Of a stretch of DNA of 64,000 bases, positions 33,201 to 64,000 are shown piece after piece; positions within the stretch are counted from its first letter, which is position 1, and each line of letters starts with the position of its first letter. The position numbers were made by a program, and so were the translations under genes. A model generated the notes under the pieces. That model saw only the letters and a list, made by a program, of their open reading frames with translations. It searched no databases and was not told where the DNA came from. This DNA is from Sminthopsis crassicaudata (Eukaryota): positions 203,257,238-203,321,237 of the forward strand of contig NC_133621.1 of the NCBI RefSeq assembly GCF_048593235.1. The letters are read 5' to 3'.

Positions 33201-36200
33201 CATATATTTATCACAGAAGGAGTCTTGAACCCAGGAATCAATCCAACAAACACAGCTAAAACCACCCCTAATGGAAGATCAACAGCTGACAGTGACAATT
33301 CAACTAGAGCCCTTCCAGGTGAGTGACATTTCATAGATGTGCTAAACACTTGGTATCTCTTCCAGCCAGCCTAGTTCTTGATGGAGCCTGTGTCAGTTGG
33401 GCCATGACTAAATTACTTCCCTTTGGGTATGAAAAGACAGGAGGCTCATCGACGTTCTTGGTTCACTGAGGACCAACATTTGAACTACCAAGTAACCTCC
33501 TCAGCCAAAGAAGTGGACAAGGAGTACTTCATTTTGATTCTGCCAGGCTACCTAGAACTTACCCAAGGGACTCTCATTTCCAACCATGCTAGCTTCAGAA
33601 AAGAAGAAAACTCATTTGTTTGGCAATGGAGCATACACTGGCAAGGCAACTAGCATTGTATTGGTTGAGGTGATCTGAGAATATGAAAGCCAGTCTTTCC
33701 AATTCTTACTCTCATTGGGAATGTATTTAAGAATAAAATTAAATTATGGGATTTAGAGATGATCTTTTCCTGTTTGCAAAAGTGCTACCTAAAACCCATT
33801 CTCTCCTTTCAATTCCTCTTCTTCAACCATGTTTGCTTCTTTCACTTGCTNNNNNNNNNNNNNNNNNNNNNNNNNNNNNNNNNNNNNNNNNNNNNNNNNN
33901 NNNNNNNNNNNNNNNNNNNNNNNNNNNNNNNNNNNNNNNNNNNNNNNNNNNNNNNNNNNNNNNNNNNNNNNNNNNNNNNNNNNNNNNNNNNNNNNNNNNN
34001 NNNNNNNNNNNNNNNNNNNNNNNNNNNNNNNNNNNNNNNNNNNNNNNNNNNNNNNNNNNNNNNNNNNNNNNNNNNNNNNNNNNNNNNNNNNNNNNNNNNN
34101 NNNNNNNNNNNNNNNNNNNGTGTTGATTGGCCTTCAATCTGTGGAGTTCTCTGTCTGGAGGCAGATGGCGTTTTCTAACCCAAGTGGATGGGGACTGCCT
34201 TGCCTCAGGACAGCCCTGCAGAGAAGCAAGGCTTTCCTAGACGATCATCATGCAAACTGGCTGTGGCTGGATACAATGTATTCCTGGCTCTCCTGCTTTC
34301 GCTCAGCCTCAGTTCATGTCAGTCTTTCCAGATCTGGCTGCAATCAGCTAGATCATCAGTTGTGATAGAATCATCCTATTGCATGACCTTGGGGGCCACC
34401 ACTTATTCAGCCATTCCCTAAGGGATGGGCATCTACTCCTGTCCCCCACTGTGTGTCCCCACCAAGGGAGCTGCTCCAACCTCCTTCCATCCCAAACAGC
34501 TGCTTCCGTAGTTTCTTCCTTGCCATTGGCCCCTCTTCAACAGGGCGTTTTCCCTTTCTTCTCCGTGTAGAAGCCGCCACATCCGCTGGAGGCACGGGGA
34601 CAAACAGAGCTGAAACCACTGCAACGGGAAGATCGGCAAGTGCGAGCTCCACCTCCACTGCCAGCACTCTCAGCCAAGGTGAGCCAGTGGAAGAGCAGAC
34701 ATCTGCTGAGCCTTTGCAAAGGCTAGCTCACCAAATAGAGCCAAGCCAAAAGCCAACTTCCTTGCCCACAGTGAACGCTTCTCTCTGCCCTGTGGCTTCC
34801 CAATCAGCCCCAGTAGGGAAGCTCCAAAGCAGCTTAGCATTGGTTCCCTGCTCGGGACACCCATTTCTCGGCTCCAAAGAGTCACTTGCTGGTGGTCTAG
34901 CTTGACCTTTCCTAGCGCTTTGTCCTTGGCCCTTCTTCTTGGCAAGGGAGCAGAGGGGAAGCCTTCTCTTCCTCATGGCTCCATTCGAATTGCTGAGGTT
35001 TTCTTTCTTTAAAACTCTCTATATGGCCAAGGCACCGATTGAAGCAGGAACCATCTCCTAAGAACGCCAAAAAAATGCGGCTGGCCAGCTGAGTCTCTTT
35101 GGCCTAGCTCTGCATTCTTCTTCCTCCACGTTTGATCTTTGCCCCCTCCTCTCCTCCACGCTCCACTTGCATCCCACTCTCCTGTTCCAAGGATACTCTT
35201 CCTTTCAGTCCCGCCAATGGGTCCTCTTTCCACATTTTGCTGTTTTCTTCGAGACACACAGACCCAATTCCCAAGGCACAAAAGCAGACACAGGCAAACA
35301 CCCCTAGGATTTCAGCCCTCCAAGAGTGCATGTTGACACTTCCCTTCAGCATTGTGCAGAAGGTGATCACAAGACAGGTTTCTCACTTGACTTGTGTGCC
35401 CATTGTTGCAGGCCAAAGTGGAACCTCCTCAGCGCCCCAAGACAATTCTTCAAGTGCCAACCCAGGTAATTCTGAAAGGACTGCTTCAGCACCCTGTTGA
35501 CACCACTCAGGAATAGAATCGGGAGGGCCCCTGGGAAACCACAGGCACACGTGATATCCTGGCCCGCCAATGTAGCCATGGGCCCTCAGAGATTCACGCC
35601 TGCTAGCCTCAAGGCATCTCCCCTCCAGGTGAGCGTTCCATGCCCTCTGCCTGTACATCTGATTCTCCCTTTCTCCTCTTTCCCAAAAGCAATGGTGACC
35701 TCAGGAGCCAGTGGGACAAACAGAGCTGAAAGCACCACTAAGGGAAGAACAACAGCTGGCAGCGGCCCTTCCACTGGATCCCCTCTAGGTGACGCACATT
35801 TCCCACCCATCATGGAGCCTTGCTGTCTCTCTCCTCCAGCCTTGCACTTTGATATATCTATATTTTTACATGCATATACGGAGAGAGATAGATATACATA
35901 AATATACATGAACACACACACACACACACATACACAGATATAGATATAGATATAGATATCTCATTGTCCATCCATAGTTTTATATTATGGTGGTTTGACA
36001 TGGAGATTCCCTTTTGTAATACCCATTTCCTTCTCAATGATGTTGGGAGGGAAAAAGCAGAACCAAGGGAAAACAAGCTGAGTGAGAAGGAAACACTGGC
36101 CACAAAGAGGAAAGAGAGAGCATGTGTTCATTTTCACTCAATCTCCTTAGCTCTCTTTCTCGATGTCGATGGCCTTTTCTCTCCAAAGCTTCTTGGGATT

Positions 36201-37236
36201 GCCTTGCATCACTAAAGCACTGAGGACAAGCAAGTCTTTCAGGGTTCATCATCACAGAGGCTTCCTGGGATGGCGGCCACTGGATTCCTGCTTCAGCTTC
36301 TTTCGCTCAGCCTCAGTTCAGGGCAAGCTTTCCAGGGCTTTCTCCAATCCGCATTTTCCACTTTTTGGGTCACCACACAAAGAGCGGCTCCCAACTCCTT
36401 ACACACCCAAGAGCTGCTCCATCAGCTTGTTCCTTGACCTTGCCCTGCCTTCAGCTTCGCATTTCTGCTGTCTTCTCCTCCTAGAAGGGGCCACATCTGC
36501 AGGAGCCATGGGGACAAACAGAGCAGAAACCACCCCAGCGGGAAGATCGCCATCTGCGAGCTCTAGCTCCACTTCCAGCTTACTCAGCCAAGGTGAGCTA
36601 GGGGCAGAGCAGAGATCTTCTGGGCCTTCAATAGATCCTTTGGAAGGTCTCCCTCGAGGCACAGACGGAAGCCAAAAGGGAGCCTCGTAACAGGCATGGC
36701 CCGCTGTACTCTCAATCCGTTGGTTTTCCTGGCGGTCAAAGGCTTCCAACTGCCATGGTGGAGGCAGCCCCCACAACCTGGGAAGCTGAAAAACAGCTTG
36801 CCATGTTTTCTCTCTGCTCGGGACAGCCCCGAAGCCTCACTTGCTGGCCCAGCGTGACCGTCCCCACAACTTGCGGCTTTGCCCTTCATCTGCTTCCCGG
36901 GCAAAGGGGCATATTTTAAGCCAGCTCTTGCTGTGGGGTCCATTACAATGGCGACCCCGATCTCGGAAACTTTGTACATGGCCAGGCCACACAATGAGGC
37001 AGGAACCATCTCCCCAAAAAAGTCCAGAAAGATTCAGCGGCTCAGCTGAGCCTGACTGGCCTCTCTCTACCTACTGTCTACCTCCACATTGGCAGCCGCA
37101 CCTACTTGGCCTCTAGAATCCCAATCTGCTCTTCCAAGGACACTCTTCCTTTCAGGTCCAGCATGGATTCCCATTTTCACATGTGGCTATTTCCCCAGGC
37201 AGCACCCGAGACTCCCACACTACAATCACACTGACA

Positions 37237-37286
<50 letters not shown>

Positions 37287-40200: not shown

Positions 40201-41241
40201 GGATTGCCTTGCATCACTAAAGCACTGAGGACAAGCAAGTCTTTCAGGGTTCATCATCACAGAGGCTTCCTGGGATGGCGGCCACTGGATTCCTGCTTCA
40301 GCTTCTTTCGCTCAGCCTCAGTTCAGGGCAAGCTTTCCAGGGCTTTCTCCAATCCGCATTTTCCACTTTTTGGGTCACCACACAAAGAGCGGCTCCCAAC
40401 TCCTTACACACCCAAGAGCTGCTCCATCAGCTTGTTCCTTGACCTTGCCCTGCCTTCAGCTTCGCATTTCTGCTGTCTTCTCCTCCTAGAAGGGGCCACA
40501 TCTGCAGGAGCCATGGGGACAAACAGAGCAGAAACCACCCCAGCGGGAAGATCGCCATCTGCGAGCTCTAGCTCCACTTCCAGCTTACTCAGCCAAGGTG
40601 AGCTAGGGGCAGAGCAGAGATCTTCTGGGCCTTCAATAGATCCTTTGGAAGGTCTCCCTCGAGGCACAGACGAAAGCCAAAAGGGAGCCTCGTAACAGGC
40701 ATGGCCCACTGTACTCTCAATCCGTTGGTTTTCCTGGCGGTCAAAGGCTTCCAACTGCCATGGTGGAGGCAGCCCCCACAACCTGGGAAGCTGAAAAACA
40801 GCTTGCCATGTTTTCTCTCTGCTCGGGACAGCCCCGAAGCCTCACTTGCTGGCCCAGCGTGACCGTCCCCACAACTTGCGGCTTTGCCCTTCATCTGCTT
40901 CCCGGGCAAAGGGGCATATTTTAAGCCAGCTCTTGCTGTGGGGTCCATTACAATGGCGACCCCGATCTCGGAAACTTTGTACATGGCCAGGCCACACAAT
41001 GAGGCAGGAACCATCTCCCCAAAAAAGTCCAGAAAGATTCAGCGGCTCAGCTGAGCCTGACTGGCCTCTCTCTACCTACTGTCTACCTCCACATTGGCAG
41101 CCGCACCTACTTGGCCTCTAGAATCCCAATCTGCTCTTCCAAGGACACTCTTCCTTTCAGGTCCAGCATGGATTCCCATTTTCACATGTGGCTATTTCCC
41201 CAGGCAGCACCCGAGACTCCCACACTACAATCACACTGACA

Positions 41242-41285
<44 letters not shown>

Positions 41286-43915: not shown

Positions 43916-43947
<32 letters not shown>

Positions 43948-45241: not shown

Positions 45242-45295
<54 letters not shown>

Positions 45296-49242: not shown

Positions 49243-49290
<48 letters not shown>

Positions 49291-53241: not shown

Positions 53242-53291
<50 letters not shown>

Positions 53292-56200: not shown

Positions 56201-57242
56201 GGGATTGCCTTGCATCACTAAAGCACTGAGGACAAGCAAGTCTTTCAGGGTTCATCATCACAGAGGCTTCCTGGGATGGCGGCCACTGGATTCCTGCTTC
56301 AGCTTCTTTCGCTCAGCCTCAGTTCAGGGCAAGCTTTCCAGGGCTTTCTCCAATCCGCATTTTCCACTTTTTGGGTCACCACACAAAGAGCGGCTCCCAA
56401 CTCCTTACACACCCAAGAGCTGCTCCATCAGCTTGTTCCTTGACCTTGCCCTGCCTTCAGCTTCGCATTTCTGCTGTCTTCTCCTCCTAGAAGGGGCCAC
56501 ATCTGCAGGAGCCATGGGGACAAACAGAGCAGAAACCACCCCAGCGGGAAGATCGCCATCTGCGAGCTCTAGCTCCACTTCCAGCTTACTCAGCCAAGGT
56601 GAGCTAGGGGCAGAGCAGAGATCTTCTGGGCCTTCAATAGATCCTTGGGAAGGTCTCCCTCGAGGCACAGACGGAAGCCAAAAGGGAGCCTCGTAACAGG
56701 CATGGCCCGCTGTACTCTCAATCCGTTGGTTTTCCTGGCGGTCAAAGGCTTCCAACTGCCATGGTGGAGGCAGCCCCCACAACCTGGGAAGCTGAAAAAC
56801 AGCTTGCCACGTTTTCTCTCTGCTCGGGACAGCCCCGAAGCCTCACTTGCTGGCCCAGCGTGACCGTCCCCACAACTTGCGGCTTTGCCCTTCATCTGCT
56901 TCCCGGGCAAAGGGGCATATTTTAAGCCAGCTCTTGCTGTGGGGTCCATTACAATGGCGACCCCGATCTCGGAAACTTTGTACATGGCCAGGCCACACAA
57001 TGAGGCAGGAACCATCTCCCCAAAAAAGTCCAGAAAGATTCAGCGGCTCAGCTGAGCCTGACTGGCCTCTCTCTACCTACTGTCTACCTCCACATTGGCA
57101 GCCGCACCTACTTGGCCTCTAGAATCCCAATCTGCTCTTCCAAGGACACTCTTCCTTTCAGGTCCAGCATGGATTCCCATTTTCACATGTGGCTATTTCC
57201 CCAGGCAGCACCCGAGACTCCCACACTACAATCACACTGACA

Positions 57243-57288
<46 letters not shown>

Positions 57289-60200
57289 CTCACACTCACA
57301 CACACCCCCAAGGAGCAAACACACGCACATAGACACATCCAAAGACAGATGGGATTTCAGCTCTCTGAGTGTGCATACCATCGAATTCCATTCGCTATGA
57401 GGCTGAGGGGGCTCCCAGCACGGGTTTCTCATCTGAGATTTGTCCCAATTGTTGCAGGCCCCGGTGCGACTCCCTCAGGGACCAAGGACAACTCTCGAAC
57501 TTCCAACCCAGGTACTTCTGGTGAGATTGGCTCAGCACCCTGCTTCTCGTGTTGCCCCTGTGCCCCCAGTCCGGCGAGCCAGACAGTCGCCCGAGGGCCC
57601 CTGAAAAACCTTGGTTGGCCCACACGTAGCCCTCTGCCCCCCAGAGTTCCGCGCCTGGAGCCCTCAAGACATTTCCACTCCAGATGACCATTTCATGGCC
57701 ACTGCCTGTACATCTGATTCTCCCTTTCTCCTCTTTCCCAGGAGCAACGGGGACTACAGGAGCCAGTGGGACAAACAGAGCTGAAAGCACCACTAAGGGA
57801 AAGTCAACAGCTGGCAGCAGCAGTTCCACTGGAGCCCCTGCAGGTGACGCCCGCTTCAGAGAGAGCCTAAGCCCTGGCTATCTCTTCTTGCTACACTACT
57901 TCTTTTCTGGATATAGATATATACCTATATAACATTTTGCAGAACCAAGGGTGTTTTCCTGCTGTCACATGCATAGTAACCTTAGGAATACACAATTCCT
58001 TATGAACCCTGTTGGGAAGAAAAATGAGAACCCAGTGGAAAAATCACAAGAGAGACACAAATACAAACAGAAAAAAATAAATTAAATAAAACAAATAAAT
58101 AAATAAATAAATGAAAAGCCGAGAAGGTGTTGATTGGCCTTCAATCTGTGGAGTTCTCTGTCTGGAGGCAGATGGCGTTTTCTAACCCAAGTGGATGGGG
58201 ACTGCCTTGCCTCAGGACAGCCCTGCAGAGAAGCAAGGCTTTCCTAGACGATCATCATGCAAACTGGCTGTGGCTGGATACAATGTATTCCTGGCTCTCC
58301 TGCTTTCGCTCAGCCTCAGTTCATGTCAGTCTTTCCAGATCTGGCTGCAATCAGCTAGATCATCAGTTGTGATAGAATCATCCTATTGCATGACCTTGGG
58401 GGCCACCACTTATTCAGCCATTCCCTAAGGGATGGGCATCTACTCCTGTCCCCCCCTGTGTGTCCCCACCAAGGGAGCTGCTCCAACCTCCTTCCATCCC
58501 AAACAGCTGCTTCCGTAGTTTCTTCCTTGCCATTGGCCCCTCTTCAACAGGGCGTTTTCCCTTTCTTCTCCTTGTAGAAGCCGCCACATCCGCTGGAGGC
58601 ACGGGGACAAACAGAGCTGAAACCACTGCAACGGGAAGATCGGCAAGTGCGAGCTCCACCTCCACTGCCAGCACTCTCAGCCAAGGTGAGCCAGTGGAAG
58701 AGCAGACATCTGCTGAGCCTTTGCAAAGGCTAGCTCACCAAATAGAGCCAAGCCAAAAGCCAACTTCCTTGCCCACAGTGAACGCTTCTCTCTGCCCTGT
58801 GGCTTCCCAATCAGCCCAAGTAGGGAAGCTCCAAAGCAGCTTAGCATTGGTTCCCTGCTCGGGACACCCATTTCTCGGCTCCAAAGAGTCACTTGCTGGT
58901 GGTCTAGCTTGACCTTTCCTAGCGCTTTGTCCTTGGCCCTTCTTCTTGGCAAGGGAGCAGAGGGGAAGCCTTCTCTTCCTCATGGCTCCATTCGAATTGC
59001 TGAGGTGTTCTTTCTTTAAAACTCTCTATATGGCCAAGGCACCGATTGAAACAGGAACCATCTCCTAAGAACGCCAAAAAAATGCGGCTGGCCAGCTGAG
59101 TCTCTTTGGCCTAGCTCTGCATTCTTCTTCCTCCACGTTTGATCTTTGCCCCCTCCTCTCCTCCACGCTCCACTTGCATCCCACTCTCCTGTTCCAAGGA
59201 TACTCTTCCTTTCAGTCCCGCCAATGGGTCCTCTTTCCACATTTTGCTGTTTTCTTCGAGACACACAGACCCAATTCCCAAGGCACAAAAGCAGACACAG
59301 GCAAACACCCCTAGGATTTCAGCCCTCCAAGAGTGCATGTTGACACTTCCCTTCAGCATTGTGCAGAAGGTGATCACAAGACAGGTTTCTCACTTGACTT
59401 GTGTGCCCATTGTTGCAGGCCAAAGTGGAACCTCCTCAGCGCCCCAAGACAATTCTTCAAGTGCCAACCCAGGTAATTCTGAAAGGACTGCTTCAGCACC
59501 CTGTTGACACCACTCAGGAATAGAATCGGGAGGGCCCCTGGGAAACCACAGGCACACGTGATATCCTGGCCCGCCAATGTAGCCATGGGCCCTCAGAGAT
59601 TCACGCCTGCTAGCCTCAAGGCATCTCCCCTCCAGGTGAGCGTTCCATGCCCTCTGCCTGTACATCTGATTCTCCCTTTCTCCTCTTTCCCAAAAGCAAT
59701 GGTGACCTCAGGAGCCAGTGGGACAAACAGAGCTGAAAGCACCACTAAGGGAAGAACAACAGCTGGCAGCGGCCCTTCCACTGGATCCCCTCTAGGTGAC
59801 GCACATTTCCCACCCATCATGGAGCCTTGCTGTCTCTCTCCTCCAGCCTTGCACTTTGATATATCTATATTTTTACATGCATATACGGAGAGAGATAGAT
59901 ATACATAAATATACATGAACACACACACACACACATACACAGATATAGATATAGATATAGATATCTCATTGTCCATTCATAGTTTTATTATGGTGGTTTG
60001 ACATGGAGATTCCCTTTTGTAATACCCATTTCCTTCTCAATGATGTTGGGAGGGAAAAAGCAGAACCAAGGGAAAACAAGCTGAGTGAGAAGGAAGCACT
60101 GGCCACAAAGAGGAAAGAGAGAGCATGTGTTCATTTTCACTCAATCTCCTTAGCTCTCTTTCTCGATGTCGATGGCCTTTTCTCTCCAAAGCTTCTTGGG

Positions 60201-61239
60201 ATTGCCTTGCATCACTAAAGCACTGAGGACAAGCAAGTCTTTCAGGGTTCATCATCACAGAGGCTTCCTGGGATGGCGGCCACTGGATTCCTGCTTCAGC
60301 TTCTTTCGCTCAGCCTCAGTTCAGGGCAAGCTTTCCAGGGCTTTCTCCAATCCGCATTTTCCACTTTTTGGGTCACCACACAAAGAGCGGCTCCCAACTC
60401 CTTACACACCCAAGAGCTGCTCCATCAGCTTGTTCCTTGACCTTGCCCTGCCTTCAGCTTCGCATTTCTGCTGTCTTCTCCTCCTAGAAGGGGCCACATC
60501 TGCAGGAGCCATGGGGACAAACAGAGCAGAAACCACCCCAGCGGGAAGATCGCCATCTGCGAGCTCTAGCTCCACTTCCAGCTTACTCAGCCAAGGTGAG
60601 CTAGGGGCAGAGCAGAGATCTTCTGGGCCTTCAATAGATCCTTGGGAAGGTCTCCCTCGAGGCACAGACGGAAGCCAAAAGGGAGCCTCGTAACAGGCAT
60701 GGCCCGCTGTACTCTCAATCCGTTGGTTTTCCTGGCGGTCAAAGGCTTCCAACTGCCATGGTGGAGGCAGCCCCCACAACCTGGGAAGCTGAAAAACAGC
60801 TTGCCACGTTTTCTCTCTGCTCGGGACAGCCCCGAAGCCTCACTTGCTGGCCCAGCGTGACCGTCCCCACAACTTGCGGCTTTGCCCTTCATCTGCTTCC
60901 CGGGCAAAGGGGCATATTTTAAGCCAGCTCTTGCTGTGGGGTCCATTACAATGGCGACCCCGATCTCGGAAACTTTGTACATGGCCAGGCCACACAATGA
61001 GGCAGGAACCATCTCCCCAAAAAAGTCCAGAAAGATTCAGCGGCTCAGCTGAGCCTGACTGGCCTCTCTCTACCTACTGTCTACCTCCACATTGGCAGCC
61101 GCACCTACTTGGCCTCTAGAATCCCAATCTGCTCTTCCAAGGACACTCTTCCTTTCAGGTCCAGCATGGATTCCCATTTTCACATGTGGCTATTTCCCCA
61201 GGCAGCACCCGAGACTCCCACACTACAATCACACTGACA

Positions 61240-61287
<48 letters not shown>

Positions 61288-63794
61288 CTCACACTCACAC
61301 ACACCCCCAAGGAGCAAACACACGCACATAGACACATCCAAAGACAGATGGGATTTCAGCTCTCTGAGTGTGCATACCATCGAATTCCATTCGCTATGAG
61401 GCTGAGGGGGCTCCCAGCACGGGTTTCTCATCTGAGATTTGTCCCAATTGTTGCAGGCCCCGGTGCGACTCCCTCAGGGACCAAGGACAACTCTCGAACT
61501 TCCAACCCAGGTACTTCTGGTGAGATTGGCTCAGCACCCTGCTTCTCGTGTTGCCCCTGTGCCCCCAGTCCGGCGAGCCAGACAGTCGCCCGAGGGCCCC
61601 TGAAAAACCTTGGTTGGCCCACACGTAGCCCTCTGCCCCCCAGAGTTCCGCGCCTGGAGCCCTCAAGACATTTCCACTCCAGATGACCATTTCATGGCCA
61701 CTGCCTGTACATCTGATTCTCCCTTTCTCCTCTTTCCCAGGAGCAACGGGGACTACAGGAGCCAGTGGGACAAACAGAGCTGAAAGCACCACTAAGGGAA
61801 AGTCAACAGCTGGCAGCAGCAGTTCCACTGGAGCCCCTGCAGGTGACGCCCGCTTCAGAGAGAGCCTAAGCCCTGGCTATCTCTTCTTGCTACACTACTT
61901 CTTTTCTGGATATAGATATATACCTATATAACATTTTGCAGAACCAAGGGTGTTTTCCTGCTGTCACATGCATAGTAACCTTAGGAATACACAATTCCTT
62001 ATGAACCCTGTTGGGAAGAAAAATGAGAACCCAGTGGAAAAATCACAAGAGAGACACAAATACAAACAGAAAAAAATAAATTAAATAAAACAAACAAATA
62101 AATAAATAAATGAAAAGCCGAGAAGGTGTTGATTGGCCTTCAATCTGTGGAGTTCTCTGTCTGGAGGCAGATGGCGTTTTCTAACCCAAGTGGATGGGGA
62201 CTGCCTTGCCTCAGGACAGCCCTGCAGAGAAGCAAGGCTTTCCTAGACGATCATCATGCAAACTGGCTGTGGCTGGATACAATGTATTCCTGGCTCTCCT
62301 GCTTTCGCTCAGCCTCAGTTCATGTCAGTCTTTCCAGATCTGGCTGCAATCAGCTAGATCATCAGTTGTGATAGAATCATCCTATTGCATGACCTTGGGG
62401 GCCACCACTTATTCAGCCATTCCCTAAGGGATGGGCATCTTCTCCTGTCCCCCCCTGTGTGTCCCCACCAAGGGAGCTGCTCCAACCTCCTTCCATCCCA
62501 AACAGCTGCTTCCGCAGTTTCTTCCTTGCCATTGGCCCCTCTTCAACAGGGCGTTTTGCCTTTCTTCTCCGTGTAGAAGCCGCCACATCCGCTGGAGGCA
62601 CGGGGACAAACAGAGCTGAAACCACTGCAACGGGAAGATCGGCAAGTGCGAGCTCCACCTCCACTGCCAGCACTCTCAGCCAAGGTGAGCCAGTGGAAGA
62701 GCAGACATCTGCTGAGCCTTTGCAAAGGCTAGCTCACCAAATAGAGCCAAGCCAAAAGCCAACTTCCTTGCCCACAGTGAACGCTTCTCTCTGCCCTGTG
62801 GCTTCCCAATCAGCCCAAGTAGGGAAGCTCCAAAGCAGCTTAGCATTGGTTCCCTGCTCGGGACACCCATTTCTCGGCTCCAAAGAGTCACTTGCTGGTG
62901 GTCTAGCTTGACCTTTCCTAGCGCTTTGTCCTTGGCCCTTCTTCTTGGCAAGGGAGCAGAGGGGAAGCCTTCTCTTCCTCATGGCTCCATTCGAATTGCT
63001 GAGGTGTTCTTTCTTTAAAACTCTCTATATGGCCAAGGCACCGATTGAAACAGGAACCATCTCCTAAGAACGCCAAAAAAATGCGGCTGGCCAGCTGAGT
63101 CTCTTTGGCCTAGCTCTGCATTCTTCTTCCTCCACGTTTGATCTTTGCCCCCTCCTCTCCTCCACGCTCCACTTGCATCCCACTCTCCTGTTCCAAGGAT
63201 ACTCTTCCTTTCAGTCCCGCCAATGGGTCCTCTTTCCACATTTTGCTGTTTTCTTCGAGACACACAGACCCAATTCCCAAGGCACAAAAGCAGACACAGG
63301 CAAACACCCCTAGGATTTCAGCCCTCCAAGAGTGCATGTTGACACTTCCCTTCAGCATTGTGCAGAAGGTGATCACAAGACAGGTTTCTCACTTGACTTG
63401 TGTGCCCATTGTTGCAGGCCAAAGTGGAACCTCCTCAGCGCCCCAAGACAATTCTTCAAGTGCCAACCCAGGTAATTCTGAAAGGACTGCTTCAGCACCC
63501 TGTTGACACCACTCAGGAATAGAATCGGGAGGGCCCCTGGGAAACCACAGGCACACGTGATATCCTGGCCCGCCAATGTAGCCATGGGCCCTCAGAGATT
63601 CACGCCTGCTAGCCTCAAGGCATCTCCCCTCCAGGTGAGCGTTCCATGCCCTCTGCCTGTACATCTGATTCTCCCTTTCTCCTCTTTCCCAAAAGCAATG
63701 GTGACCTCAGGAGCCAGTGGGACAAACAGAGCTGAAAGCACCACTAAGGGAAGAACAACAGCTGGCAGCGGCCCTTCCACTGGATCCCCTCTAG
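857..63794 (+). CDS. MUC19: Gel-forming mucin MUC19, internal multi-exon portion (D2-D'-D3 region, linker, exon-repeat PTS region); start and end of the gene lie outside the window
   Basis: 19 consecutive GT-AG exons join in frame into VWD/C8/TIL domains. D2 has GLCG only and D3 has CGLCG, as known for submaxillary apomucin. Motifs [22 protein letters not shown] and [19 protein letters not shown] resemble MUC19 as I recall it. Gly/Ser/Thr/Ala-rich repeats follow. Confidence 0.9.
2468..2560 (+). CDS. MUC19: MUC19 exon (VWD2)
   Basis: atag|GAT...TCA|gtaagt, 93 nt; [31 protein letters not shown]. Confidence 0.92.
3650..3734 (+). CDS. MUC19: MUC19 exon (VWD2)
   Basis: ttag|TCT...TCAG|gtaagc, 85 nt; [28 protein letters not shown]. 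Only this AG keeps the frame. Confidence 0.8.
3834..3971 (+). CDS. MUC19: MUC19 exon (VWD2)
   Basis: acag|AT...TTAG|gtaagt, 138 nt; [45 protein letters not shown]. Confidence 0.92.
4415..4449. repeat. (CA)n microsatellite
   Basis: Direct reading. Confidence 0.95.
5299..5448 (+). CDS. MUC19: MUC19 exon (end of VWD2)
   Basis: atag|GA...AATG|gtaata, 150 nt; [50 protein letters not shown]. Confidence 0.92.
6050..6200 (+). mobile_element. MIR/CORE-SINE fragment
   Basis: gggttcaaa...ctcagttatttcacctgtaaaatgaggat core motif. Confidence 0.55.
6850..8530 (-). mobile_element. LINE-1 3'-end fragment (marsupial type), 5'-truncated, interrupted by a SINE; boundaries approximate
   Basis: Antisense L1 3'UTR/ORF2-end motifs (ttctgctcacttcac, ataacttgttcagccattc, ataaatatttttgcacat) shared with 16100-16450. 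Confidence 0.75.
6989..7206 (-). mobile_element. MAR1-type CORE SINE nested in the L1 fragment
   Basis: Reverse complement has the tRNA-like head (gcagccaggtggcac), the core (cagtttcctcatctgtaaaatga) and an (aac)n tail. Confidence 0.7.
8821..8915 (+). CDS. MUC19: MUC19 exon (C8)
   Basis: tcag|AA...GAG|gtgggt, 95 nt; [31 protein letters not shown]. Confidence 0.9.
9815..9941 (+). CDS. MUC19: MUC19 exon (C8)
   Basis: aaag|AAA...TGTG|gtaagc, 127 nt; [42 protein letters not shown]. Confidence 0.9.
10682..10928 (+). CDS. MUC19: MUC19 exon (TIL/E)
   Basis: atag|AA...TG|gtatgt, 247 nt; [81 protein letters not shown]. Confidence 0.92.
11170..11340 (+). mobile_element. MIR/CORE-SINE fragment
   Basis: gtgacttgggaagtccacttagttcctctagg...atttataaaatg core-like motif. 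Confidence 0.45.
12217..12267. repeat. Compound (ATC)n-(ATT)n microsatellite
   Basis: Direct reading. Confidence 0.85.
12367..12419 (+). CDS. MUC19: MUC19 exon (E module)
   Basis: ccag|T...TCAA|gtaagt, 53 nt; [17 protein letters not shown]. Confidence 0.88.
12426..13170 (-). mobile_element. L2 3'-end fragment
   Basis: Begins caatcaatcaacatttattaagtatctactgtgt...cctgccttcaagaagcttacaatcta, the typical antisense L2 tail. Confidence 0.6.
13265..13365 (+). CDS. MUC19: MUC19 exon (TIL')
   Basis: ctag|AA...AAT|gtaagt, 101 nt; [33 protein letters not shown]. Confidence 0.9.
13558..13709 (+). CDS. MUC19: MUC19 exon (TIL'/E')
   Basis: gtag|GAG...TG|gtgcat, 152 nt; [50 protein letters not shown]. 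Confidence 0.9.
14074..14212 (+). CDS. MUC19: MUC19 exon (start of VWD3)
   Basis: ttag|T...GAG|gtaatt, 139 nt; [46 protein letters not shown]. Confidence 0.92.
14973..15077 (+). CDS. MUC19: MUC19 exon (VWD3)
   Basis: ttag|GAT...AAG|gtacag, 105 nt; [35 protein letters not shown]. Confidence 0.92.
15176..15370 (+). CDS. MUC19: MUC19 exon (VWD3)
   Basis: atag|GAC...AGT|gtatgt, 195 nt; [65 protein letters not shown]. Confidence 0.92.
15835..18955 (-). mobile_element. Decayed LINE-1 with 5'UTR, ORF1, ORF2 start and ORF2 end/3'UTR but no RT (internally deleted); boundaries approximate
   Basis: Poly-T at 15835. Reverse strand at ~16560-16640 resembles the KCWRG..WN ORF2 C-terminus; 16989-17020 reads [10 protein letters not shown] (endonuclease AGVAILISDK motif). 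ORF1-like sequence at ~17400-18200 and 5'UTR-like sequence to ~18955. Confidence 0.7.
19032..19271 (+). CDS. MUC19: MUC19 exon (VWD3 CGLCG/C8)
   Basis: gcag|GGA...AAG|gtaaca, 240 nt; [44 protein letters not shown]...KDCHNK. Confidence 0.93.
19352..19508 (+). CDS. MUC19: MUC19 exon (C8-3)
   Basis: ttag|GTC...TGCC|gtaagc, 157 nt; [52 protein letters not shown]. Confidence 0.93.
19958..20320 (-). mobile_element. L2 3'-end fragment
   Basis: tcattaaacatttattgaatgcctat...ctgccttcaagttgcttaca. Confidence 0.5.
20649..20774 (+). CDS. MUC19: MUC19 exon (TIL3)
   Basis: acag|CT...GAAG|gtaagg, 126 nt; [41 protein letters not shown]. Confidence 0.92.
20990..21130 (-). mobile_element. MIR fragment
   Basis: cattttatagatgaggaaattgaggcaga core motif in antisense. 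Confidence 0.55.
21673..21814 (+). CDS. MUC19: MUC19 exon (TIL3/E3)
   Basis: acag|GT...TG|gtacag, 142 nt; [46 protein letters not shown]. Confidence 0.92.
22686..22717 (+). CDS. MUC19: MUC19 exon (end of E3)
   Basis: tcag|T...AATG|gtgagt, 32 nt; [10 protein letters not shown], completes the split Cys codon. Confidence 0.85.
23325..23357 (+). CDS. MUC19: MUC19 short Ser/Thr linker exon
   Basis: acag|AA...TCAG|gtaaat, 33 nt, phase 1-1; [10 protein letters not shown]. Confidence 0.78.
24270..26905 (+). mobile_element. Degenerate LINE-1 ORF2/3'UTR fragment with internal deletions
   Basis: NWRLNN at 24303, [16 protein letters not shown] at ~24880, [11 protein letters not shown] at ~25096, FVDDM at ~25358, KCWRG at ~26383; many stops and frameshifts. 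Confidence 0.85.
27190..27910. repeat. AT-rich low-complexity/(TA)-like region
   Basis: Degenerate TATA/TAATA repeats. Confidence 0.7.
28034..28403 (+). mobile_element. Solo ERV LTR (orientation assumed)
   Basis: TGTTAT...TTACA termini, 370 bp, near target-site duplication ggggaa/ggggag, TATA-like catataag internally. Confidence 0.65.
28683..28832 (+). mobile_element. Young WSINE1-type tRNA-derived SINE
   Basis: GGGGCAGCTAGGTGGCGCAGTGG (A box), GTTCAAATC (B box), A tail, perfect 18-bp TSD AACCAAAATGATTAGAGT at 28665-28682 and 28833-28850. Confidence 0.92.
29068..29112 (+). CDS. MUC19: MUC19 short Ser/Thr linker exon
   Basis: Pyrimidine tract, ttag|GA...AAAG|gtacca, 45 nt, phase 1-1; [14 protein letters not shown]. 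Confidence 0.65.
29127..29285 (+). mobile_element. Older WSINE1-type SINE, 14 nt downstream of an exon end
   Basis: ggcagctaagtggtacaatg...aatctggtctcagacact...gggcaagtcactta, A-rich tail, near TSD catcttaagt/catcctaagt. Confidence 0.75.
29446..29493 (+). CDS. MUC19: MUC19 short Ser/Thr linker exon
   Basis: tcag|AA...TTAG|gtaagt, 48 nt, phase 1-1; [15 protein letters not shown]. Confidence 0.8.
29753..29806 (+). CDS. MUC19: MUC19 short Ser/Thr linker exon
   Basis: ccag|TT...ACAG|gtaaac, 54 nt, phase 1-1; [17 protein letters not shown]. Confidence 0.75.
30244..30281. repeat. (CA)n microsatellite
   Basis: Direct reading. Confidence 0.95.
30990..31400 (+). mobile_element. L2 fragment
   Basis: ctccacacaactatcaaaatgatattcctaaagtgcagggctgatcatg resembles the L2 3' region. 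Confidence 0.5.
31700..32220 (-). mobile_element. LINE-1 5'UTR fragment; boundaries approximate
   Basis: Ends in ctttactctgccatcttggttctgcc (antisense L1 start); similar layout to 18500-18955. Confidence 0.55.
32921..32974 (+). CDS. MUC19: MUC19 54-nt exon, diverged paralogue of array exons B/E
   Basis: gtag|GA...GAAG|gtaatt, phase 1-1; [17 protein letters not shown]. Flanking introns align with array introns. Confidence 0.8.
33217..33318 (+). CDS. MUC19: MUC19 102-nt exon, diverged paralogue of array exons C/F
   Basis: acag|AA...CCAG|gtgagt, phase 1-1; [33 protein letters not shown]. Confidence 0.82.
33851..34119. other. Assembly gap (269 N)
   Basis: Run of N between the unique AT-rich region and the tandem array. 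Confidence 1.
34571..34678 (+). CDS. MUC19: MUC19 repeat exon A, unit 1
   Basis: gtag|AA...CAAG|gtgagc, 108 nt, phase 1-1; [35 protein letters not shown]. Confidence 0.85.
35412..35465 (+). CDS. MUC19: MUC19 repeat exon B, unit 1
   Basis: gcag|GC...CCAG|gtaatt, 54 nt; [17 protein letters not shown]. Confidence 0.82.
35690..35788 (+). CDS. MUC19: MUC19 repeat exon C, unit 1 (shifted AAG acceptor)
   Basis: cccaaaag|CA...CTAG|gtgacg, 99 nt; [32 protein letters not shown]. The ancestral AG position reads AA. Confidence 0.6.
35913..35959. repeat. (CA)n + (TAGATA)n microsatellite in the C-D intron, repeated in each unit with variable length
   Basis: Direct reading. Confidence 0.9.
35990..36420 (-). 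mobile_element. L1 3'-end fragment upstream of exon D (present in every unit; internally deleted relative to the A-side copy)
   Basis: gttgggagggaaaaagcagaac, gggattgccttgcatcact, ctcagcctcagttcagggcaagctttccag align with the L1 3' ends at 7290-7640 and 16070-16450. Confidence 0.7.
36485..36592 (+). CDS. MUC19: MUC19 repeat exon D, unit 1
   Basis: ctag|AA...CAAG|gtgagc, 108 nt; [35 protein letters not shown]. Confidence 0.85.
37234..37302. repeat. Interrupted (CA)n microsatellite in the D-E intron, repeated in each unit with variable length
   Basis: Direct reading. Confidence 0.9.
37456..37509 (+). CDS. MUC19: MUC19 repeat exon E, unit 1
   Basis: gcag|GC...CCAG|gtactt, 54 nt; [17 protein letters not shown]. 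Confidence 0.8.
37740..37841 (+). CDS. MUC19: MUC19 repeat exon F, unit 1
   Basis: ccag|GA...GCAG|gtgacg, 102 nt; [33 protein letters not shown]. Confidence 0.82.
37925..38490 (-). mobile_element. L1 3'-end fragment upstream of exon A (present in every unit)
   Basis: acttattcagccattc (34401-34416 in unit 1) versus acttgttcagccattc (7547-7562); tcagttcatgtcagtctt versus tcagttcatataggtctt (16259-16276). Confidence 0.75.
38576..38683 (+). CDS. MUC19: MUC19 repeat exon A, unit 2
   Basis: Copy of exon A with intact AG/GT. Confidence 0.85.
39417..39470 (+). CDS. MUC19: MUC19 repeat exon B, unit 2
   Basis: Copy of exon B. Confidence 0.82.
39695..39793 (+). CDS. MUC19: MUC19 repeat exon C, unit 2
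   Basis: Copy of exon C (AAG acceptor). Confidence 0.6.
40490..40597 (+). CDS. MUC19: MUC19 repeat exon D, unit 2
   Basis: Copy of exon D. Confidence 0.85.
41455..41508 (+). CDS. MUC19: MUC19 repeat exon E, unit 2
   Basis: Copy of exon E. Confidence 0.8.
41739..41840 (+). CDS. MUC19: MUC19 repeat exon F, unit 2
   Basis: Copy of exon F. Confidence 0.82.
42575..42682 (+). CDS. MUC19: MUC19 repeat exon A, unit 3
   Basis: Copy of exon A. Confidence 0.85.
43416..43469 (+). CDS. MUC19: MUC19 repeat exon B, unit 3
   Basis: Copy of exon B. Confidence 0.82.
43694..43792 (+). CDS. MUC19: MUC19 repeat exon C, unit 3
   Basis: Copy of exon C (AAG acceptor). Confidence 0.6.
44495..44602 (+). CDS. MUC19: MUC19 repeat exon D, unit 3
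   Basis: Copy of exon D. Confidence 0.85.
45457..45510 (+). CDS. MUC19: MUC19 repeat exon E, unit 3
   Basis: Copy of exon E. Confidence 0.8.
45741..45842 (+). CDS. MUC19: MUC19 repeat exon F, unit 3
   Basis: Copy of exon F. Confidence 0.82.
46577..46684 (+). CDS. MUC19: MUC19 repeat exon A, unit 4
   Basis: Copy of exon A. Confidence 0.85.
47418..47471 (+). CDS. MUC19: MUC19 repeat exon B, unit 4
   Basis: Copy of exon B. Confidence 0.82.
47696..47794 (+). CDS. MUC19: MUC19 repeat exon C, unit 4
   Basis: Copy of exon C (AAG acceptor). Confidence 0.6.
48491..48598 (+). CDS. MUC19: MUC19 repeat exon D, unit 4
   Basis: Copy of exon D. Confidence 0.85.
49460..49513 (+). CDS. MUC19: MUC19 repeat exon E, unit 4
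   Basis: Copy of exon E. Confidence 0.8.
49744..49845 (+). CDS. MUC19: MUC19 repeat exon F, unit 4
   Basis: Copy of exon F. Confidence 0.82.
50580..50687 (+). CDS. MUC19: MUC19 repeat exon A, unit 5
   Basis: Copy of exon A. Confidence 0.85.
51421..51474 (+). CDS. MUC19: MUC19 repeat exon B, unit 5
   Basis: Copy of exon B. Confidence 0.82.
51699..51797 (+). CDS. MUC19: MUC19 repeat exon C, unit 5
   Basis: Copy of exon C (AAG acceptor). Confidence 0.6.
52490..52597 (+). CDS. MUC19: MUC19 repeat exon D, unit 5
   Basis: Copy of exon D; variant T-richer pyrimidine tract. Confidence 0.85.
53461..53514 (+). CDS. MUC19: MUC19 repeat exon E, unit 5
   Basis: Copy of exon E. Confidence 0.8.
53745..53846 (+). 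CDS. MUC19: MUC19 repeat exon F, unit 5
   Basis: Copy of exon F. Confidence 0.82.
54581..54688 (+). CDS. MUC19: MUC19 repeat exon A, unit 6
   Basis: Copy of exon A. Confidence 0.85.
55422..55475 (+). CDS. MUC19: MUC19 repeat exon B, unit 6
   Basis: Copy of exon B. Confidence 0.82.
55700..55798 (+). CDS. MUC19: MUC19 repeat exon C, unit 6
   Basis: Copy of exon C (AAG acceptor). Confidence 0.6.
56491..56598 (+). CDS. MUC19: MUC19 repeat exon D, unit 6
   Basis: Copy of exon D. Confidence 0.85.
57458..57511 (+). CDS. MUC19: MUC19 repeat exon E, unit 6
   Basis: Copy of exon E. Confidence 0.8.
57742..57843 (+). CDS. MUC19: MUC19 repeat exon F, unit 6
   Basis: Copy of exon F. Confidence 0.82.
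58578..58685 (+). CDS. MUC19: MUC19 repeat exon A, unit 7
   Basis: Copy of exon A. Confidence 0.85.
59419..59472 (+). CDS. MUC19: MUC19 repeat exon B, unit 7
   Basis: Copy of exon B. Confidence 0.82.
59697..59795 (+). CDS. MUC19: MUC19 repeat exon C, unit 7
   Basis: Copy of exon C (AAG acceptor). Confidence 0.6.
60488..60595 (+). CDS. MUC19: MUC19 repeat exon D, unit 7
   Basis: Copy of exon D. Confidence 0.85.
61457..61510 (+). CDS. MUC19: MUC19 repeat exon E, unit 7
   Basis: Copy of exon E. Confidence 0.8.
61741..61842 (+). CDS. MUC19: MUC19 repeat exon F, unit 7
   Basis: Copy of exon F. Confidence 0.82.
62577..62684 (+). CDS. MUC19: MUC19 repeat exon A, unit 8
   Basis: Copy of exon A. 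Confidence 0.85.
63418..63471 (+). CDS. MUC19: MUC19 repeat exon B, unit 8
   Basis: Copy of exon B. Confidence 0.82.
63696..63794 (+). CDS. MUC19: MUC19 repeat exon C, unit 8
   Basis: Copy of exon C (AAG acceptor). Confidence 0.6.
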
Positions 63795-64000
63795 GTGACG
63801 CACATTTCCCACCCATCATGGAGCCTTGCTGTCTCTCTCCTCCAGCCTTGCACTTTGATATATCTATATTTTTACATGCATATACGGAGAGAGATAGATA
63901 TACATAAATATACATGAACACACACACACACACATACACAGATATAGATATAGATATAGATATCTCATTGTCCATTCATAGTTTTATTATGGTGGTTTGA

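What the first reader, a model, noticed from the sequence alone, without database searches (positions are those of the whole stretch)
34120..64000. Mucin glycodomain built from a tandem array of whole 4-kb exon-intron cassettes
No long mucin exon exists in the window. The Gly/Ser/Thr/Ala-rich domain is instead encoded by at least 45 small exons in at least 7.5 near-identical cassettes, each adding 525 coding nt (175 aa) per ~4000 bp. In MUC2, MUC5AC, MUC5B and MUC6, and as I recall in pig, cow and mouse MUC19-family genes, the tandem repeat lies inside a large exon. Human MUC19 is annotated with many short exons, so multi-exon mucin domains are not unprecedented. The notable point here is a recent, actively homogenised gene-scale VNTR whose unit includes introns, retrotransposon pieces and microsatellites. 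Mucin length could then vary by unequal crossover in 175-aa steps.
Basis: partly seen in the sequence, partly recalled or inferred. Interest (0 to 1): 0.85.

Follow-up and report, generated by a model that had tools for sequence, protein, structure and literature searches.

The report
MUC19 mucin domain from repeated exon cassettes
The sugar-carrying middle part of the gel-forming mucin MUC19 in this marsupial is encoded by dozens of small spliced exons in near-identical 4-kb exon-plus-intron units, not by one giant exon; RNA data confirm this, but other mammals' MUC19 genes look the same, so it is interesting rather than unique.

Summary
**Observation:** confirmed. Positions 34120-64000 hold 7.47 head-to-tail copies of a ~4.0-kb unit, with mean substitution divergence of 0.27%. 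Each unit has six AG/GT-bounded, phase-1 exons of 108/54/102/108/54/99 nt, totalling 525 nt or 175 aa (42% Ser+Thr). All 45 exon copies are identical.

**Expression:** RNA-like contigs from three public runs carry GT..AG joints at all six predicted junctions, including last-to-first exon between units. One contig leaves the array for a sequence matching the start of the MUC19 C-terminal region.

**Gene identity:** upstream same-strand exons encode VWD-C8-TIL domains. Their closest named relatives are all "mucin-19", and they are about 98% identical to a Tasmanian devil protein. So this is MUC19 of a dasyurid close to the devil.

- Bilby RefSeq MUC19 has the same 34/18-aa modules, a 138-aa higher-order repeat, no giant exon, and isoforms differing by whole modules.
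- Carnivore models look similar.
- The kangaroo-rat locus has 4-5-kb multi-exon cassettes at 84-91% identity.

**Open points:** the array starts at an assembly gap and runs off the window. Its copy number is not calibrated.

The parts
858..10923 (+). Exons of a VWD-C8-TIL assembly (D2) of the same gene. Approximate exon matches: 858-992, 2468-2560, 3650-3973, 5292-5447, 8817-8915, 9812-9940, 10681-10923.
   Evidence: Pfam VWD, C8 and TIL hits on stop-free stretches. tblastn of devil G3WX81 at 93-100% identity.
13216..13707 (+). D' (TIL-type) exons, about 13216-13365 and 13558-13707.
   Evidence: Pfam TIL hit. Devil protein match at 92-100%.
14075..21821 (+). D3 assembly (VWD-C8-TIL) exons. Approximate positions: 14075-14212, 14964-15083, 15176-15370, 19032-19270, 19352-19531, 20651-20776, 21672-21821.
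   Evidence: Pfam VWD and C8 hits. PDB hits to MUC2/MUC5AC/MUC5B D3 and to VWF. The highest-identity library hits are all named mucin-19.
29446..29806 (+). Two candidate early mucin-domain exons, 29446-29493 and 29753-29806. They are predicted only.
   Evidence: A rule-based scan for AG..GT, phase 1, open frame and Ser/Thr/Gly-rich content. There is no RNA evidence.
32921..32974 (+). Diverged 54-nt exon of the B/E type, upstream of the array.
   Evidence: AG/GT flanks, phase 1, same length as B/E.
33217..33318 (+). Diverged 102-nt exon of the C/F type, upstream of the array.
   Evidence: blastn at 78-79% to exons C/F plus flanking intron. tblastn at 48% over 33 aa. AG/GT flanks.
33851..34119 (.). 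Assembly gap (269 N) directly before the array.
34120..64000 (+). Tandem array of 7.47 units of about 4.0 kb. It holds 45 exons (3,936 coding nt, 1,312 aa) and runs off the window end.
34120..35999 (+). Partial unit 0. Exons D 34571-34678, E 35412-35465, F 35690-35788.
36000..40004 (+). Unit 1, the reference unit. Exons A 36485-36592, B 37456-37509, C 37740-37841, D 38576-38683, E 39417-39470, F 39695-39793. Also (CA)n at about 37229-37300 and 39916-39940, an AAAT-type repeat at about 38085-38110, and a dispersed-repeat fragment at about 38406-38443.
   Evidence: Spliced joints D-E, E-F, F-A' and C-D.
40005..44009 (+). Unit 2. Exons A 40490-40597, B 41455-41508, C 41739-41840, D 42575-42682, E 43416-43469, F 43694-43792.
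   Evidence: Joints A'-B' and B'-C'.
44010..48005 (+). Unit 3. Exons A 44495-44602, B 45457-45510, C 45741-45842, D 46577-46684, E 47418-47471, F 47696-47794.
48006..52004 (+). Unit 4. Exons A 48491-48598, B 49460-49513, C 49744-49845, D 50580-50687, E 51421-51474, F 51699-51797.
52005..56005 (+). Unit 5. Exons A 52490-52597, B 53461-53514, C 53745-53846, D 54581-54688, E 55422-55475, F 55700-55798.
56006..60002 (+). Unit 6. Exons A 56491-56598, B 57458-57511, C 57742-57843, D 58578-58685, E 59419-59472, F 59697-59795. It carries an 'early-type' variant tract, at reference positions 38094-38570, inside an otherwise 'late-type' unit.
60003..64000 (+). Unit 7. Exons A 60488-60595, B 61457-61510, C 61741-61842, D 62577-62684, E 63418-63471, F 63696-63794.

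Best explanation
The array is the central O-glycosylated (mucin) domain of the MUC19 orthologue of a dasyurid marsupial.

**How it is encoded.** The domain is not one giant repeat-bearing exon. It is encoded by small exons of 54-108 nt that all start and end in codon phase 1. These exons sit in a 4-kb higher-order cassette (A-B-C-D-E-F) which is itself an old duplication of a 2-kb three-exon unit. The whole cassette, introns and microsatellites included, was amplified or homogenised very recently, most likely by unequal crossing-over with some gene conversion.

**How it is used.** The transcript splices the exons in genomic order, from cassette to cassette. Each cassette adds 175 residues of Ser/Thr/Gly/Ala-rich backbone.

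**Consequence of the phasing (inferred).** Because every exon is phase 1-1 and a multiple of three, duplicating, deleting or skipping any exon, half-cassette or cassette keeps the reading frame. Mucin length could therefore change in the germ line by unequal exchange, and possibly in the soma by exon skipping.

**Shown here:** the repeat, the exons, their splicing, and the gene identity.

**Inferred:** the amplification mechanism, copy-number polymorphism, glycosylation, and the absence of any giant exon downstream.
For: **Repeat and exon structure**.

**Splicing**. RNA-like contig sets X10 and X9 (organism A) and X11 (organism B) carry GT..AG joints. After the stated cut offsets these fall exactly at D|E (38683|39417), E|F (39470|39695), F|A' (39793|40490), A'|B' (40597|41455), B'|C' (41508|41739) and C|D (joints that 'go back' one unit).

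**Exit from the array**. An X11 contig of 743 nt leaves exon D for a sequence that translates in frame to G-C-L-G-P-A-P-V-C-H-G. This matches the start of the C-terminal region in bilby MUC19 (RCLGPEPVCHGPLGE) and pika MUC19 (PRPVCHGPLGE).

**Gene identity.**
- Upstream same-strand exons give VWD, C8 and TIL Pfam hits.
- The highest-identity hits of the D3 exon are all annotated mucin-19.
- The D-domain exons are about 98% identical to devil G3WX81.

**Homology of the modules.** The 175-aa cassette aligns to the bilby MUC19 mucin domain at 37-44% identity, scoring 44-58 bits. The best of 50 shuffles scored 21 bits.

**Age.** Mean pairwise substitution divergence between units is 0.27%, range 0.08-0.55%. 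Between the two halves of a unit, exons are 70-86% identical and introns 60-67%.

**Constraint.** None of the 27 substitution columns lies in the 525 exon bases. About 3.5 would be expected, giving P of about 0.02.

**Exchange between units.** Variants form two blocks, units 1-3 against units 4-7, with a mosaic tract in unit 6.

**Composition.** 42% Ser+Thr, 15% Gly, 15% Ala, 6% Pro.
Against: - The array abuts an assembly gap and leaves the window, so neither its 5' junction with the unique exons nor its 3' exit is seen in the DNA.
- All public runs are Logan contigs whose RNA/DNA type is only guessed by the tool. The spliced joints are what identify them as RNA.
- Contigs collapse identical copies. 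They therefore prove that at least two cassettes are spliced in tandem, not how many.
- The exit contig is known only from 30 loose letters, and it comes from 'organism B'.
- The absence of exon variation has modest statistical weight.
- Only 4 of 91 site pairs fail the four-gamete test, so ongoing homogenisation is weakly supported. A single recent burst of duplication would explain the data equally well.
Confidence: 0.88

Rival explanations
1. The array is real, but the assembly misstates it. The true copy number is much higher or lower, or some cassette copies lie elsewhere in the genome as a satellite-like amplification outside the transcribed gene.
For: - A 269-N gap sits at the array's 5' edge.
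- DNA-like run X1 has contig word depth of about 650-1160 on the cassette. Its dispersed-repeat contigs have depth 7-9.
- X1 holds only 0.28 of the words of the single-copy D3 region, against 0.85 of the cassette words.
- Runs X5-X8 hold 0.25-0.44 of the cassette words and 0.00 of the D3 words.
- RNA contig depths suggest only about 7-11 cassettes per transcript: 87-133 for cassette junctions against 12.1 for the exit contig.
Against:
- The units carry unit-specific variants in a tree-like pattern, which is not expected of a collapsed or artificially expanded repeat.
- X1's contigs carry the majority 'late-type' alleles found in the assembly.
Confidence: 0.35
2. Most cassette exons are alternative. 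Mature MUC19 mRNA normally includes only one or a few cassettes, so the array is mainly a reservoir and not a long translated domain.
For: - All exons are symmetric (phase 1-1), so skipping is frame-neutral.
- Bilby RefSeq isoforms differ by 18, 34 or 52 aa, which are whole modules.
Against: - Only consecutive junctions were seen. No D-F, A-C or cassette-skipping joints appeared.
- F-A' joints show read-through from one cassette to the next.
- Cassette-junction contigs are about 7-11 times deeper than the exit contig in X11.
- The longest bilby isoform includes about 65 modules.
Confidence: 0.1
3. The F-to-A joints come from back-splicing (circular RNA) of a single cassette, not from linear splicing across tandem cassettes.
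For: A joint from the last exon back to the first exon of one unit is indistinguishable, in collapsed contigs, from a linear joint between identical neighbouring units.
Against: - The genome assembly holds at least seven distinguishable units with private variants.
- Homologous bilby and carnivore proteins are long linear arrays of the same modules.
Confidence: 0.02

Closest known systems
MUC19 of other therian mammals: RefSeq models for bilby (Macrotis lagotis XP_074050907 and its isoforms), dingo, stoat and Arctic fox; and the Dipodomys ordii genomic locus
   Same: - Same gene and same domain order: D-assemblies, then Gly/Ser/Thr/Ala-rich modules, then the VWC-type C-terminus.
- The bilby mucin domain (1,671 aa) consists only of 34-aa and 18-aa modules homologous to the window's exons. 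It has a near-identical 138-aa higher-order repeat and ends directly at CLGPEPVCHG.
- Carnivore models show near-identical modular repeats.
- The Dipodomys locus has 3.9-5.0-kb tandem cassettes, each with several exons.
   Different: - Here the higher-order unit is six exons (175 aa, 4.0 kb), and the copies are far more alike: 99.5-99.9%, with exons identical. Dipodomys cassettes are 84-91% identical.
- The cassette composition is lineage-specific.
- DNA of the bilby, fox and wombat loci could not be fetched because the genes exceed 100 kb. Their exon-intron structure is therefore inferred from module sizes and isoform steps.
Human MUC19, and the classical gel-forming mucins MUC2, MUC5AC, MUC5B and MUC6
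   Same: Gel-forming mucins with N-terminal VWD-C8-TIL assemblies and a central glycosylated repeat domain whose length varies.
   Different: - In these genes the variable tandem repeat lies in one large uninterrupted exon. Human MUC19 has a ~12-kb exon with a 30-bp repeat (PMC10557577). MUC2/5AC/5B/6 follow the same plan (PMC9712336). [quoted passage not shown]
- Here no ORF longer than 198 aa exists in the array, and the repeat unit spans introns.
- From my own recollection, human MUC19 also has many small exons before its big exon. I could not check this (PMC3175562 is not held).
Chicken Muc13 and Xenopus MucXS (Otogl) multi-exon mucin domains
   Same: The mucin domain is split over many exons. 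In chicken Muc13 each exon is one repeat unit, and the authors proposed length control by splicing (PMC1552070; PMC5789918).
   Different: - Those are a transmembrane mucin and a frog skin mucin.
- No near-identical kb-scale higher-order cassette array is described for them.
Multi-exon coding macrosatellites such as the LPA kringle-IV type 2 repeat (5.5 kb, two exons) and the DMBT1 SRCR/SID repeats. This comparison rests on my own knowledge and was not checked here.
   Same: - A kb-scale unit containing whole exons plus introns, repeated head to tail and in frame.
- Very high identity between units.
- Protein length set by unit number.
   Different: - Those units encode folded domains. This one encodes disordered, glycosylated sequence.
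- Copy-number polymorphism is documented for LPA and DMBT1 but was not tested here.

Membership tests
Gel-forming mucin MUC19 (orthologue) | N-terminal VWD-C8-TIL assemblies (D1, D2, D', D3) on the same strand, upstream of the mucin domain | tested here: met
   VWD, C8 and TIL Pfam hits in the order VWD-C8-TIL, TIL, VWD-C8-TIL between 858 and 21821. D1 lies outside the window.
Gel-forming mucin MUC19 (orthologue) | Closest relatives are MUC19, not MUC2, MUC5AC, MUC5B, MUC6, VWF or FCGBP | tested here: met
   - All hits with 77-86% identity to the D3 exon that carry a eukaryotic name are mucin-19.
- About 98% identity to devil G3WX81, 84% to wombat and 76% to bilby mucin-19 over the D exons.
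- PDB hits to MUC2, MUC5AC and MUC5B are much weaker.
- No phylogenetic tree was built.
Gel-forming mucin MUC19 (orthologue) | Central Ser/Thr-rich domain with the MUC19-type composition (Gly/Ala-rich, Pro-poor) | tested here: met
   42% Ser+Thr, 15% Gly, 15% Ala, 6% Pro. Homologous to the bilby MUC19 modules.
Gel-forming mucin MUC19 (orthologue) | C-terminal VWC and cystine-knot domains directly after the mucin domain, with no fourth VWD | tested here: inconclusive
   This region is not in the window. One RNA contig from organism B leaves exon D for 30 visible letters that translate to GCLGPAPVCHG, which matches the start of the C-terminal region of bilby and pika MUC19.
Gel-forming mucin MUC19 (orthologue) | Synteny: LRRK2 next to MUC19 | not testable with these tools
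The window starts inside the gene. Wombat MUC19 has LRRK2 just upstream.
Gel-forming mucin MUC19 (orthologue) | Dense O-glycosylation and disulfide-linked polymer formation | not testable with these tools
   This needs biochemistry.
Classical mucin VNTR (repeat inside one large exon) | Tandem repeat units contiguous within a single uninterrupted coding exon | tested here: not met
   The longest ORF in a unit is 198 aa. Repeat modules are separated by introns of 224-863 nt that are removed in RNA contigs.
Multi-exon coding macrosatellite (LPA KIV-2-like) | A kb-scale unit with whole exons and introns, head to tail, frame-preserving | tested here: met
   A 4.0-kb unit with six phase 1-1 exons totalling 525 nt.
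Multi-exon coding macrosatellite (LPA KIV-2-like) | Very high identity between units, from recent expansion or concerted evolution | tested here: met
   0.27% mean substitution divergence, with exons identical.
Multi-exon coding macrosatellite (LPA KIV-2-like) | Unit number varies between individuals | not tested
   Only one assembly was seen. Contig depth in public runs could not be calibrated.

The most novel reading that the evidence does not exclude
In marsupials, and perhaps in many therian mammals, MUC19 has no giant repeat exon at all. Its entire glycodomain is a train of symmetric phase-1 mini-exons arranged in lineage-specific, concertedly evolving kb-scale cassettes.

Mucin length would then be tunable in two ways: in the germ line by unequal exchange, and within an individual by exon skipping.

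In this dasyurid the cassette may be present in far more copies than the 7.5 seen here, possibly tens to hundreds. Repeated exchange may also have driven the strong GC enrichment of its introns.
Probability: 0.4. Interest if true: 0.65.

Novelty: new member of a known kind. Interest (0 to 1): 0.5.

Why it matters
Current mucin genomics starts from the premise that the variable repeat sits in one large exon, and pipelines for typing mucin length are built on that premise.

This case is RNA-supported: a major gel-forming mucin builds its whole visible glycodomain from spliced mini-exons in near-identical 4-kb cassettes. Three consequences follow.

- **Typing.** Mucin length in such species must be measured as a macrosatellite, by depth, long reads or optical maps, and not as an exon VNTR.
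- **Annotation.** Gene predictors will mis-phase or drop these exons. Mis-phased stretches are visible in several eutherian MUC19 models.
- **Biology.** Alternative splicing becomes a possible second route to length variation.

The locus also offers a clean example for studying concerted evolution. Its exons are invariant, its introns are slightly variable, and its introns are GC-enriched relative to AT-rich flanks. The same design appears in bilby, carnivore and rodent MUC19, so it is probably a general, under-described property of the gene and not a curiosity of one species.

Tried and rejected
- **Tandem Repeats Finder** found nothing, because its longest period is 500. K-mer distances and BLAST were used instead.
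- **tblastn of the 175-aa cassette against the Dipodomys locus** gave only a weak composition-level match. The rodent and marsupial cassettes are not demonstrably the same exons.
- **The Condylura locus** is mostly N, and its repeat is a 153-156-nt intra-exon type. It is not informative for cassettes.
- **DNA for five loci** could not be obtained. Marmota, bilby, Arctic fox and wombat genes exceed 100 kb, and bilby isoform X3 is not on record.
- **The primary paper on the human MUC19 gene** (PMC3175562) is not held. My recollection that human MUC19 has many small mucin-domain exons remains unchecked.
- **Literature searches** for MUC19 with marsupial, or with multi-exon or cassette repeats, found no description of this architecture.
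- **Search of the cassette against the upstream 34 kb** found only microsatellites and the one diverged exon. No shared transposon was found, so the L1 claim is only indirectly supported.
- **Minus strand and other frames.** ORFs of 90-144 aa exist, but only as expected in 50% GC DNA. None has support.
- **Copy number from contig depth** was considered but not adopted as a result, because no single-copy control could be laid.
Full report
**1.

The window changes abruptly at a 269-N gap (33851-34119). Before the gap the DNA is about 30% GC. From 34120 to the window end it is about 50% GC, with a visible 4-kb beat in the composition.

Distances between identical 20-mers peak at 3996-4005 bases. 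BLAST of one unit finds a partial copy and seven full head-to-tail copies at 99.5-99.6% identity. Tandem Repeats Finder missed the array only because its period limit is 500.

An alignment of the units has 49 variable columns. About 27 are substitutions. The rest are length changes in (CA)n and similar microsatellites. Mean pairwise substitution divergence among full units is 0.27%, range 0.08-0.55%.

**2.

In the reference unit (36000-40004) the six segments are:

| Exon | Coordinates | Length (nt) |
|---|---|---|
| A | 36485-36592 | 108 |
| B | 37456-37509 | 54 |
| C | 37740-37841 | 102 |
| D | 38576-38683 | 108 |
| E | 39417-39470 | 54 |
| F | 39695-39793 | 99 |

- Each follows a pyrimidine tract and AG, and is followed by GT.
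- All lengths are multiples of three, and all exons are phase 1-1.
- Joined, they give one open frame of 525 nt (175 aa). The other two frames contain stops.
- Exact-match search finds 45 copies in the order DEF(ABCDEF)x7, every one with AG/GT flanks. That is 3,936 coding nt, or 1,312 aa, in the window.
- The peptide is 42% Ser+Thr, 15% Gly, 15% Ala and 6% Pro.
- No ORF longer than 198 aa exists in a unit on either strand, so the array has no long exon.

The unit is an old dimer. Half A-B-C aligns to half D-E-F along its whole length. Exons are 70-86% identical and introns 60-67%.

**3. The exons are spliced as predicted**

I laid Logan contigs of four public runs on 37700-41860.

*The DNA-like run.* X1 covers exons and introns alike. 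Its contigs run straight through exon-intron borders and it has no joints.

*The RNA-like runs.* X10 and X9 (organism A) and X11 (organism B) cover essentially the exons. They carry GT..AG joints which, after the stated cut offsets, fall exactly at:
- 38683|39417 (D-E)
- 39470|39695 (E-F)
- 39793|40490 (F-A of the next unit)
- 40597|41455 (A-B)
- 41508|41739 (B-C)
- C-D, seen as joints that 'go back' one unit

All six junction types are therefore observed, in up to three runs from three studies.

*The shifted acceptor.* The E-F joint uses the acceptor 3 nt downstream of the position homologous to exon C's acceptor.

*The exit contig.* A 743-nt contig in X11 leaves exon D for unlike sequence. 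Its first 30 letters, read in the phase set by exon D, give G-C-L-G-P-A-P-V-C-H-G. Bilby MUC19 ends its mucin domain with RCLGPEPVCHGPLGE and pika MUC19 with PRPVCHGPLGE. So this contig is the exit from the array into the C-terminal cysteine-rich region.

**4. The gene is MUC19 of a dasyurid**

- Stop-free stretches on the + strand between 858 and 21821 give Pfam VWD, C8 and TIL hits in the order expected for D2, D' and D3.
- The D3 exon matches the D3 assemblies of MUC2, MUC5AC and MUC5B, and matches VWF, in the PDB.
- In the 1.8-billion-protein library, the hits with the highest identity (77-86%) that carry a eukaryotic name are all mucin-19. A wider search lists mucin-19 from dozens of mammals.
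- The window's D-domain exons are about 98% identical to Tasmanian devil G3WX81, with genuine interior substitutions. They are less similar to wombat (84%) and bilby (76%). The genome is therefore a dasyurid close to, but not, the devil.

Between D3 and the gap lie diverged, AT-richer relatives of the cassette exons: 32921-32974 (54 nt) and 33217-33318 (102 nt). Two further candidates lie near 29.4-29.8 kb. The mucin domain thus starts with old unique modules and continues into the young array.

**5. How it probably works**

*Shown:* a 4-kb unit with six symmetric exons, repeated at least 7.5 times, spliced in order.

*Inferred:*
- The unit spread, or is kept uniform, by unequal crossing-over. 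Variants fall into two blocks, units 1-3 and units 4-7, as expected for local duplication.
- Unit 6 carries a tract of at least 476 bp of the other block's alleles. This produces the only four-gamete failures, 4 of 91 pairs. It points to at least one conversion event.
- With a neutral rate of 1-2 x 10^-9 per site per year (my assumption), 0.27% divergence corresponds to roughly one million years.
- None of the 27 substitutions lies in the 13% of the unit that is exon. About 3.5 would be expected, giving P of about 0.02. This is weak evidence of purifying selection.
- The array's introns are 45-59% GC and its CpG observed/expected ratio is 0.31. The flank is 30% GC with a ratio of 0.10. GC-biased gene conversion in a recombination-active array would explain this, but I did not test it.
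- Because all exons are phase 1-1, gain, loss or skipping of any exon keeps the frame.

**6. This is not unique to this genome**

*Bilby.* The RefSeq models for bilby mucin-19 have a 1,671-aa mucin domain made only of 34-aa and 18-aa modules, that is 102- and 54-nt exons. Its strongest internal period is 138 aa. It leads directly into the VWC region with no giant exon. The window's cassette aligns to it at 37-44% identity, scoring 44-58 bits against at most 21 for shuffles. The listed isoforms (numbered up to X21, 2456-2610 aa) differ by 18, 34, 52... residues, which are whole modules.

*Carnivores.* Dingo, stoat and Arctic fox models also show D3, then near-identical modular repeats, then PPPVCHGPLGE.

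*Kangaroo rat.* At DNA level, the MUC19-like locus (L001, 49226-66621) holds tandem cassettes of 3.9-5.0 kb at 84-91% identity. Each contains several exons of 75-435 nt.

*Other eutherians.* Several models contain mis-phased stretches that look like these mini-exons read in the wrong frame.

*Star-nosed mole.* By contrast, it shows a 153-156-nt repeat in contiguous sequence.

**7. Literature**

- Multi-exon mucin domains have been described for chicken Muc13, with the suggestion that splicing could set length (PMC1552070), and for Xenopus MucXS (PMC5789918).
- For human MUC19 the variable 30-bp repeat lies in a ~12-kb exon (PMC10557577).
- A recent preprint states that all mucins harbour a large VNTR exon (PMC13345508).
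- I found no paper describing the MUC19 cassette architecture or marsupial MUC19.
- The primary human MUC19 gene paper is not held.

**8. What remains open**

The array starts at a gap and leaves the window, so unit number is unknown.

*RNA estimate.* In X11, cassette-junction contigs have depth 87-133, against 12.1 for the exit contig. That suggests roughly 7-11 cassettes per transcript.

*DNA signal.*
- In DNA-like run X1 the cassette contigs have depth 650-1160.
- X1 holds 0.85 of the cassette words but only 0.28 of the words of the single-copy D3 region.
- Runs X5-X8 hold 0.25-0.44 of the cassette words and none of the D3 words.

This over-representation confirms a multi-copy state in several samples. 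It may mean many more copies than 7.5, copies elsewhere in the genome, or library bias.

**9. Verdict**

- The feature is a real, expressed, recently expanded multi-exon coding macrosatellite forming the MUC19 glycodomain.
- It is a new, well-documented member of a kind already visible in other mammals' MUC19 gene models and in a few other mucins. It is not a categorically new design.
- Interest is moderate (0.5). It contradicts the 'one big exon' rule of thumb for gel-forming mucins, and it gives a tractable case of concerted evolution of exon-intron cassettes.

Noticed in passing
window 39471-39695 (and the same place in every unit): Exon F uses an AAG acceptor 3 nt downstream of the position homologous to exon C's acceptor. 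The E-F joint in RNA contigs of X11 uses exactly this site, so the shifted acceptor is functional.
   Followed up: yes
window 34120-64000 versus 1-33850: The array, introns included, is 45-59% GC with a CpG observed/expected ratio of 0.31. The rest of the gene is about 30% GC with a ratio of 0.10. This may be GC-biased gene conversion in a recombining array.
   Followed up: partly
window 36400-41860 (cassette) versus 18950-21850 (single copy): - DNA-like public runs hold far more of the cassette's words than of the single-copy D3 region.
- Run X1 shows contig depth of 650-1160 on the cassette.
- Copy number may be much higher than the 7.5 units in the window, but this is not calibrated.
   Followed up: partly
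window ~58096-58572 (unit 6; reference positions 38094-38570): Four linked variants of the 'early' unit type sit inside an otherwise 'late-type' unit. This is probably a gene-conversion tract of at least 476 bp.
   Followed up: partly
run X11, contig leaving window 38683: A 743-nt contig joins exon D to a sequence that translates to GCLGPAPVCHG, the start of the MUC19 C-terminal region. The array may therefore end on a half-cassette and be followed by no large exon.
   Followed up: partly
window 38406-38443: About 159 contigs of run X1, at 90-95% likeness, pile on this 38-base stretch. It is a fragment of a dispersed repeat carried along in every unit.
   Followed up: partly
L001:49226-66621 (Dipodomys ordii, KN672388.1): The kangaroo-rat MUC19-like locus has 3.9-5.0-kb tandem cassettes at 84-91% identity, each with several coding exons of 75-435 nt. 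The array continues into the next gene model.
   Followed up: partly
proteins P0201 and P0268-P0280 (Macrotis lagotis mucin-19 isoforms): RefSeq lists isoforms numbered up to X21, of 2456-2610 aa. Their lengths differ by 18, 34, 52... residues, which are whole 54- or 102-nt modules. Exon skipping in the mucin domain is therefore modelled from RNA data in bilby.
   Followed up: partly
protein P0028 (MCQ8064007.1): A 494-aa 'VWD domain-containing protein, partial [Salmonella enterica]' on a 1,485-base contig is 77% identical to this MUC19 D3 exon. It is almost certainly host (mammalian) contamination in a bacterial assembly.
   Followed up: no
protein P0027 / L002 (Condylura cristata): The 'mucin-19-like' model fuses LRRK2 domains (Ras/Roc/COR) to MUC19 D domains, a prediction artefact of neighbouring genes. 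The locus as held is mostly N.
   Followed up: no
window 24736-26900: L1 ORF2-like open stretches lie in the long AT-rich intron between D3 and the first mucin-domain exons. This is ordinary intronic transposon debris.
   Followed up: no
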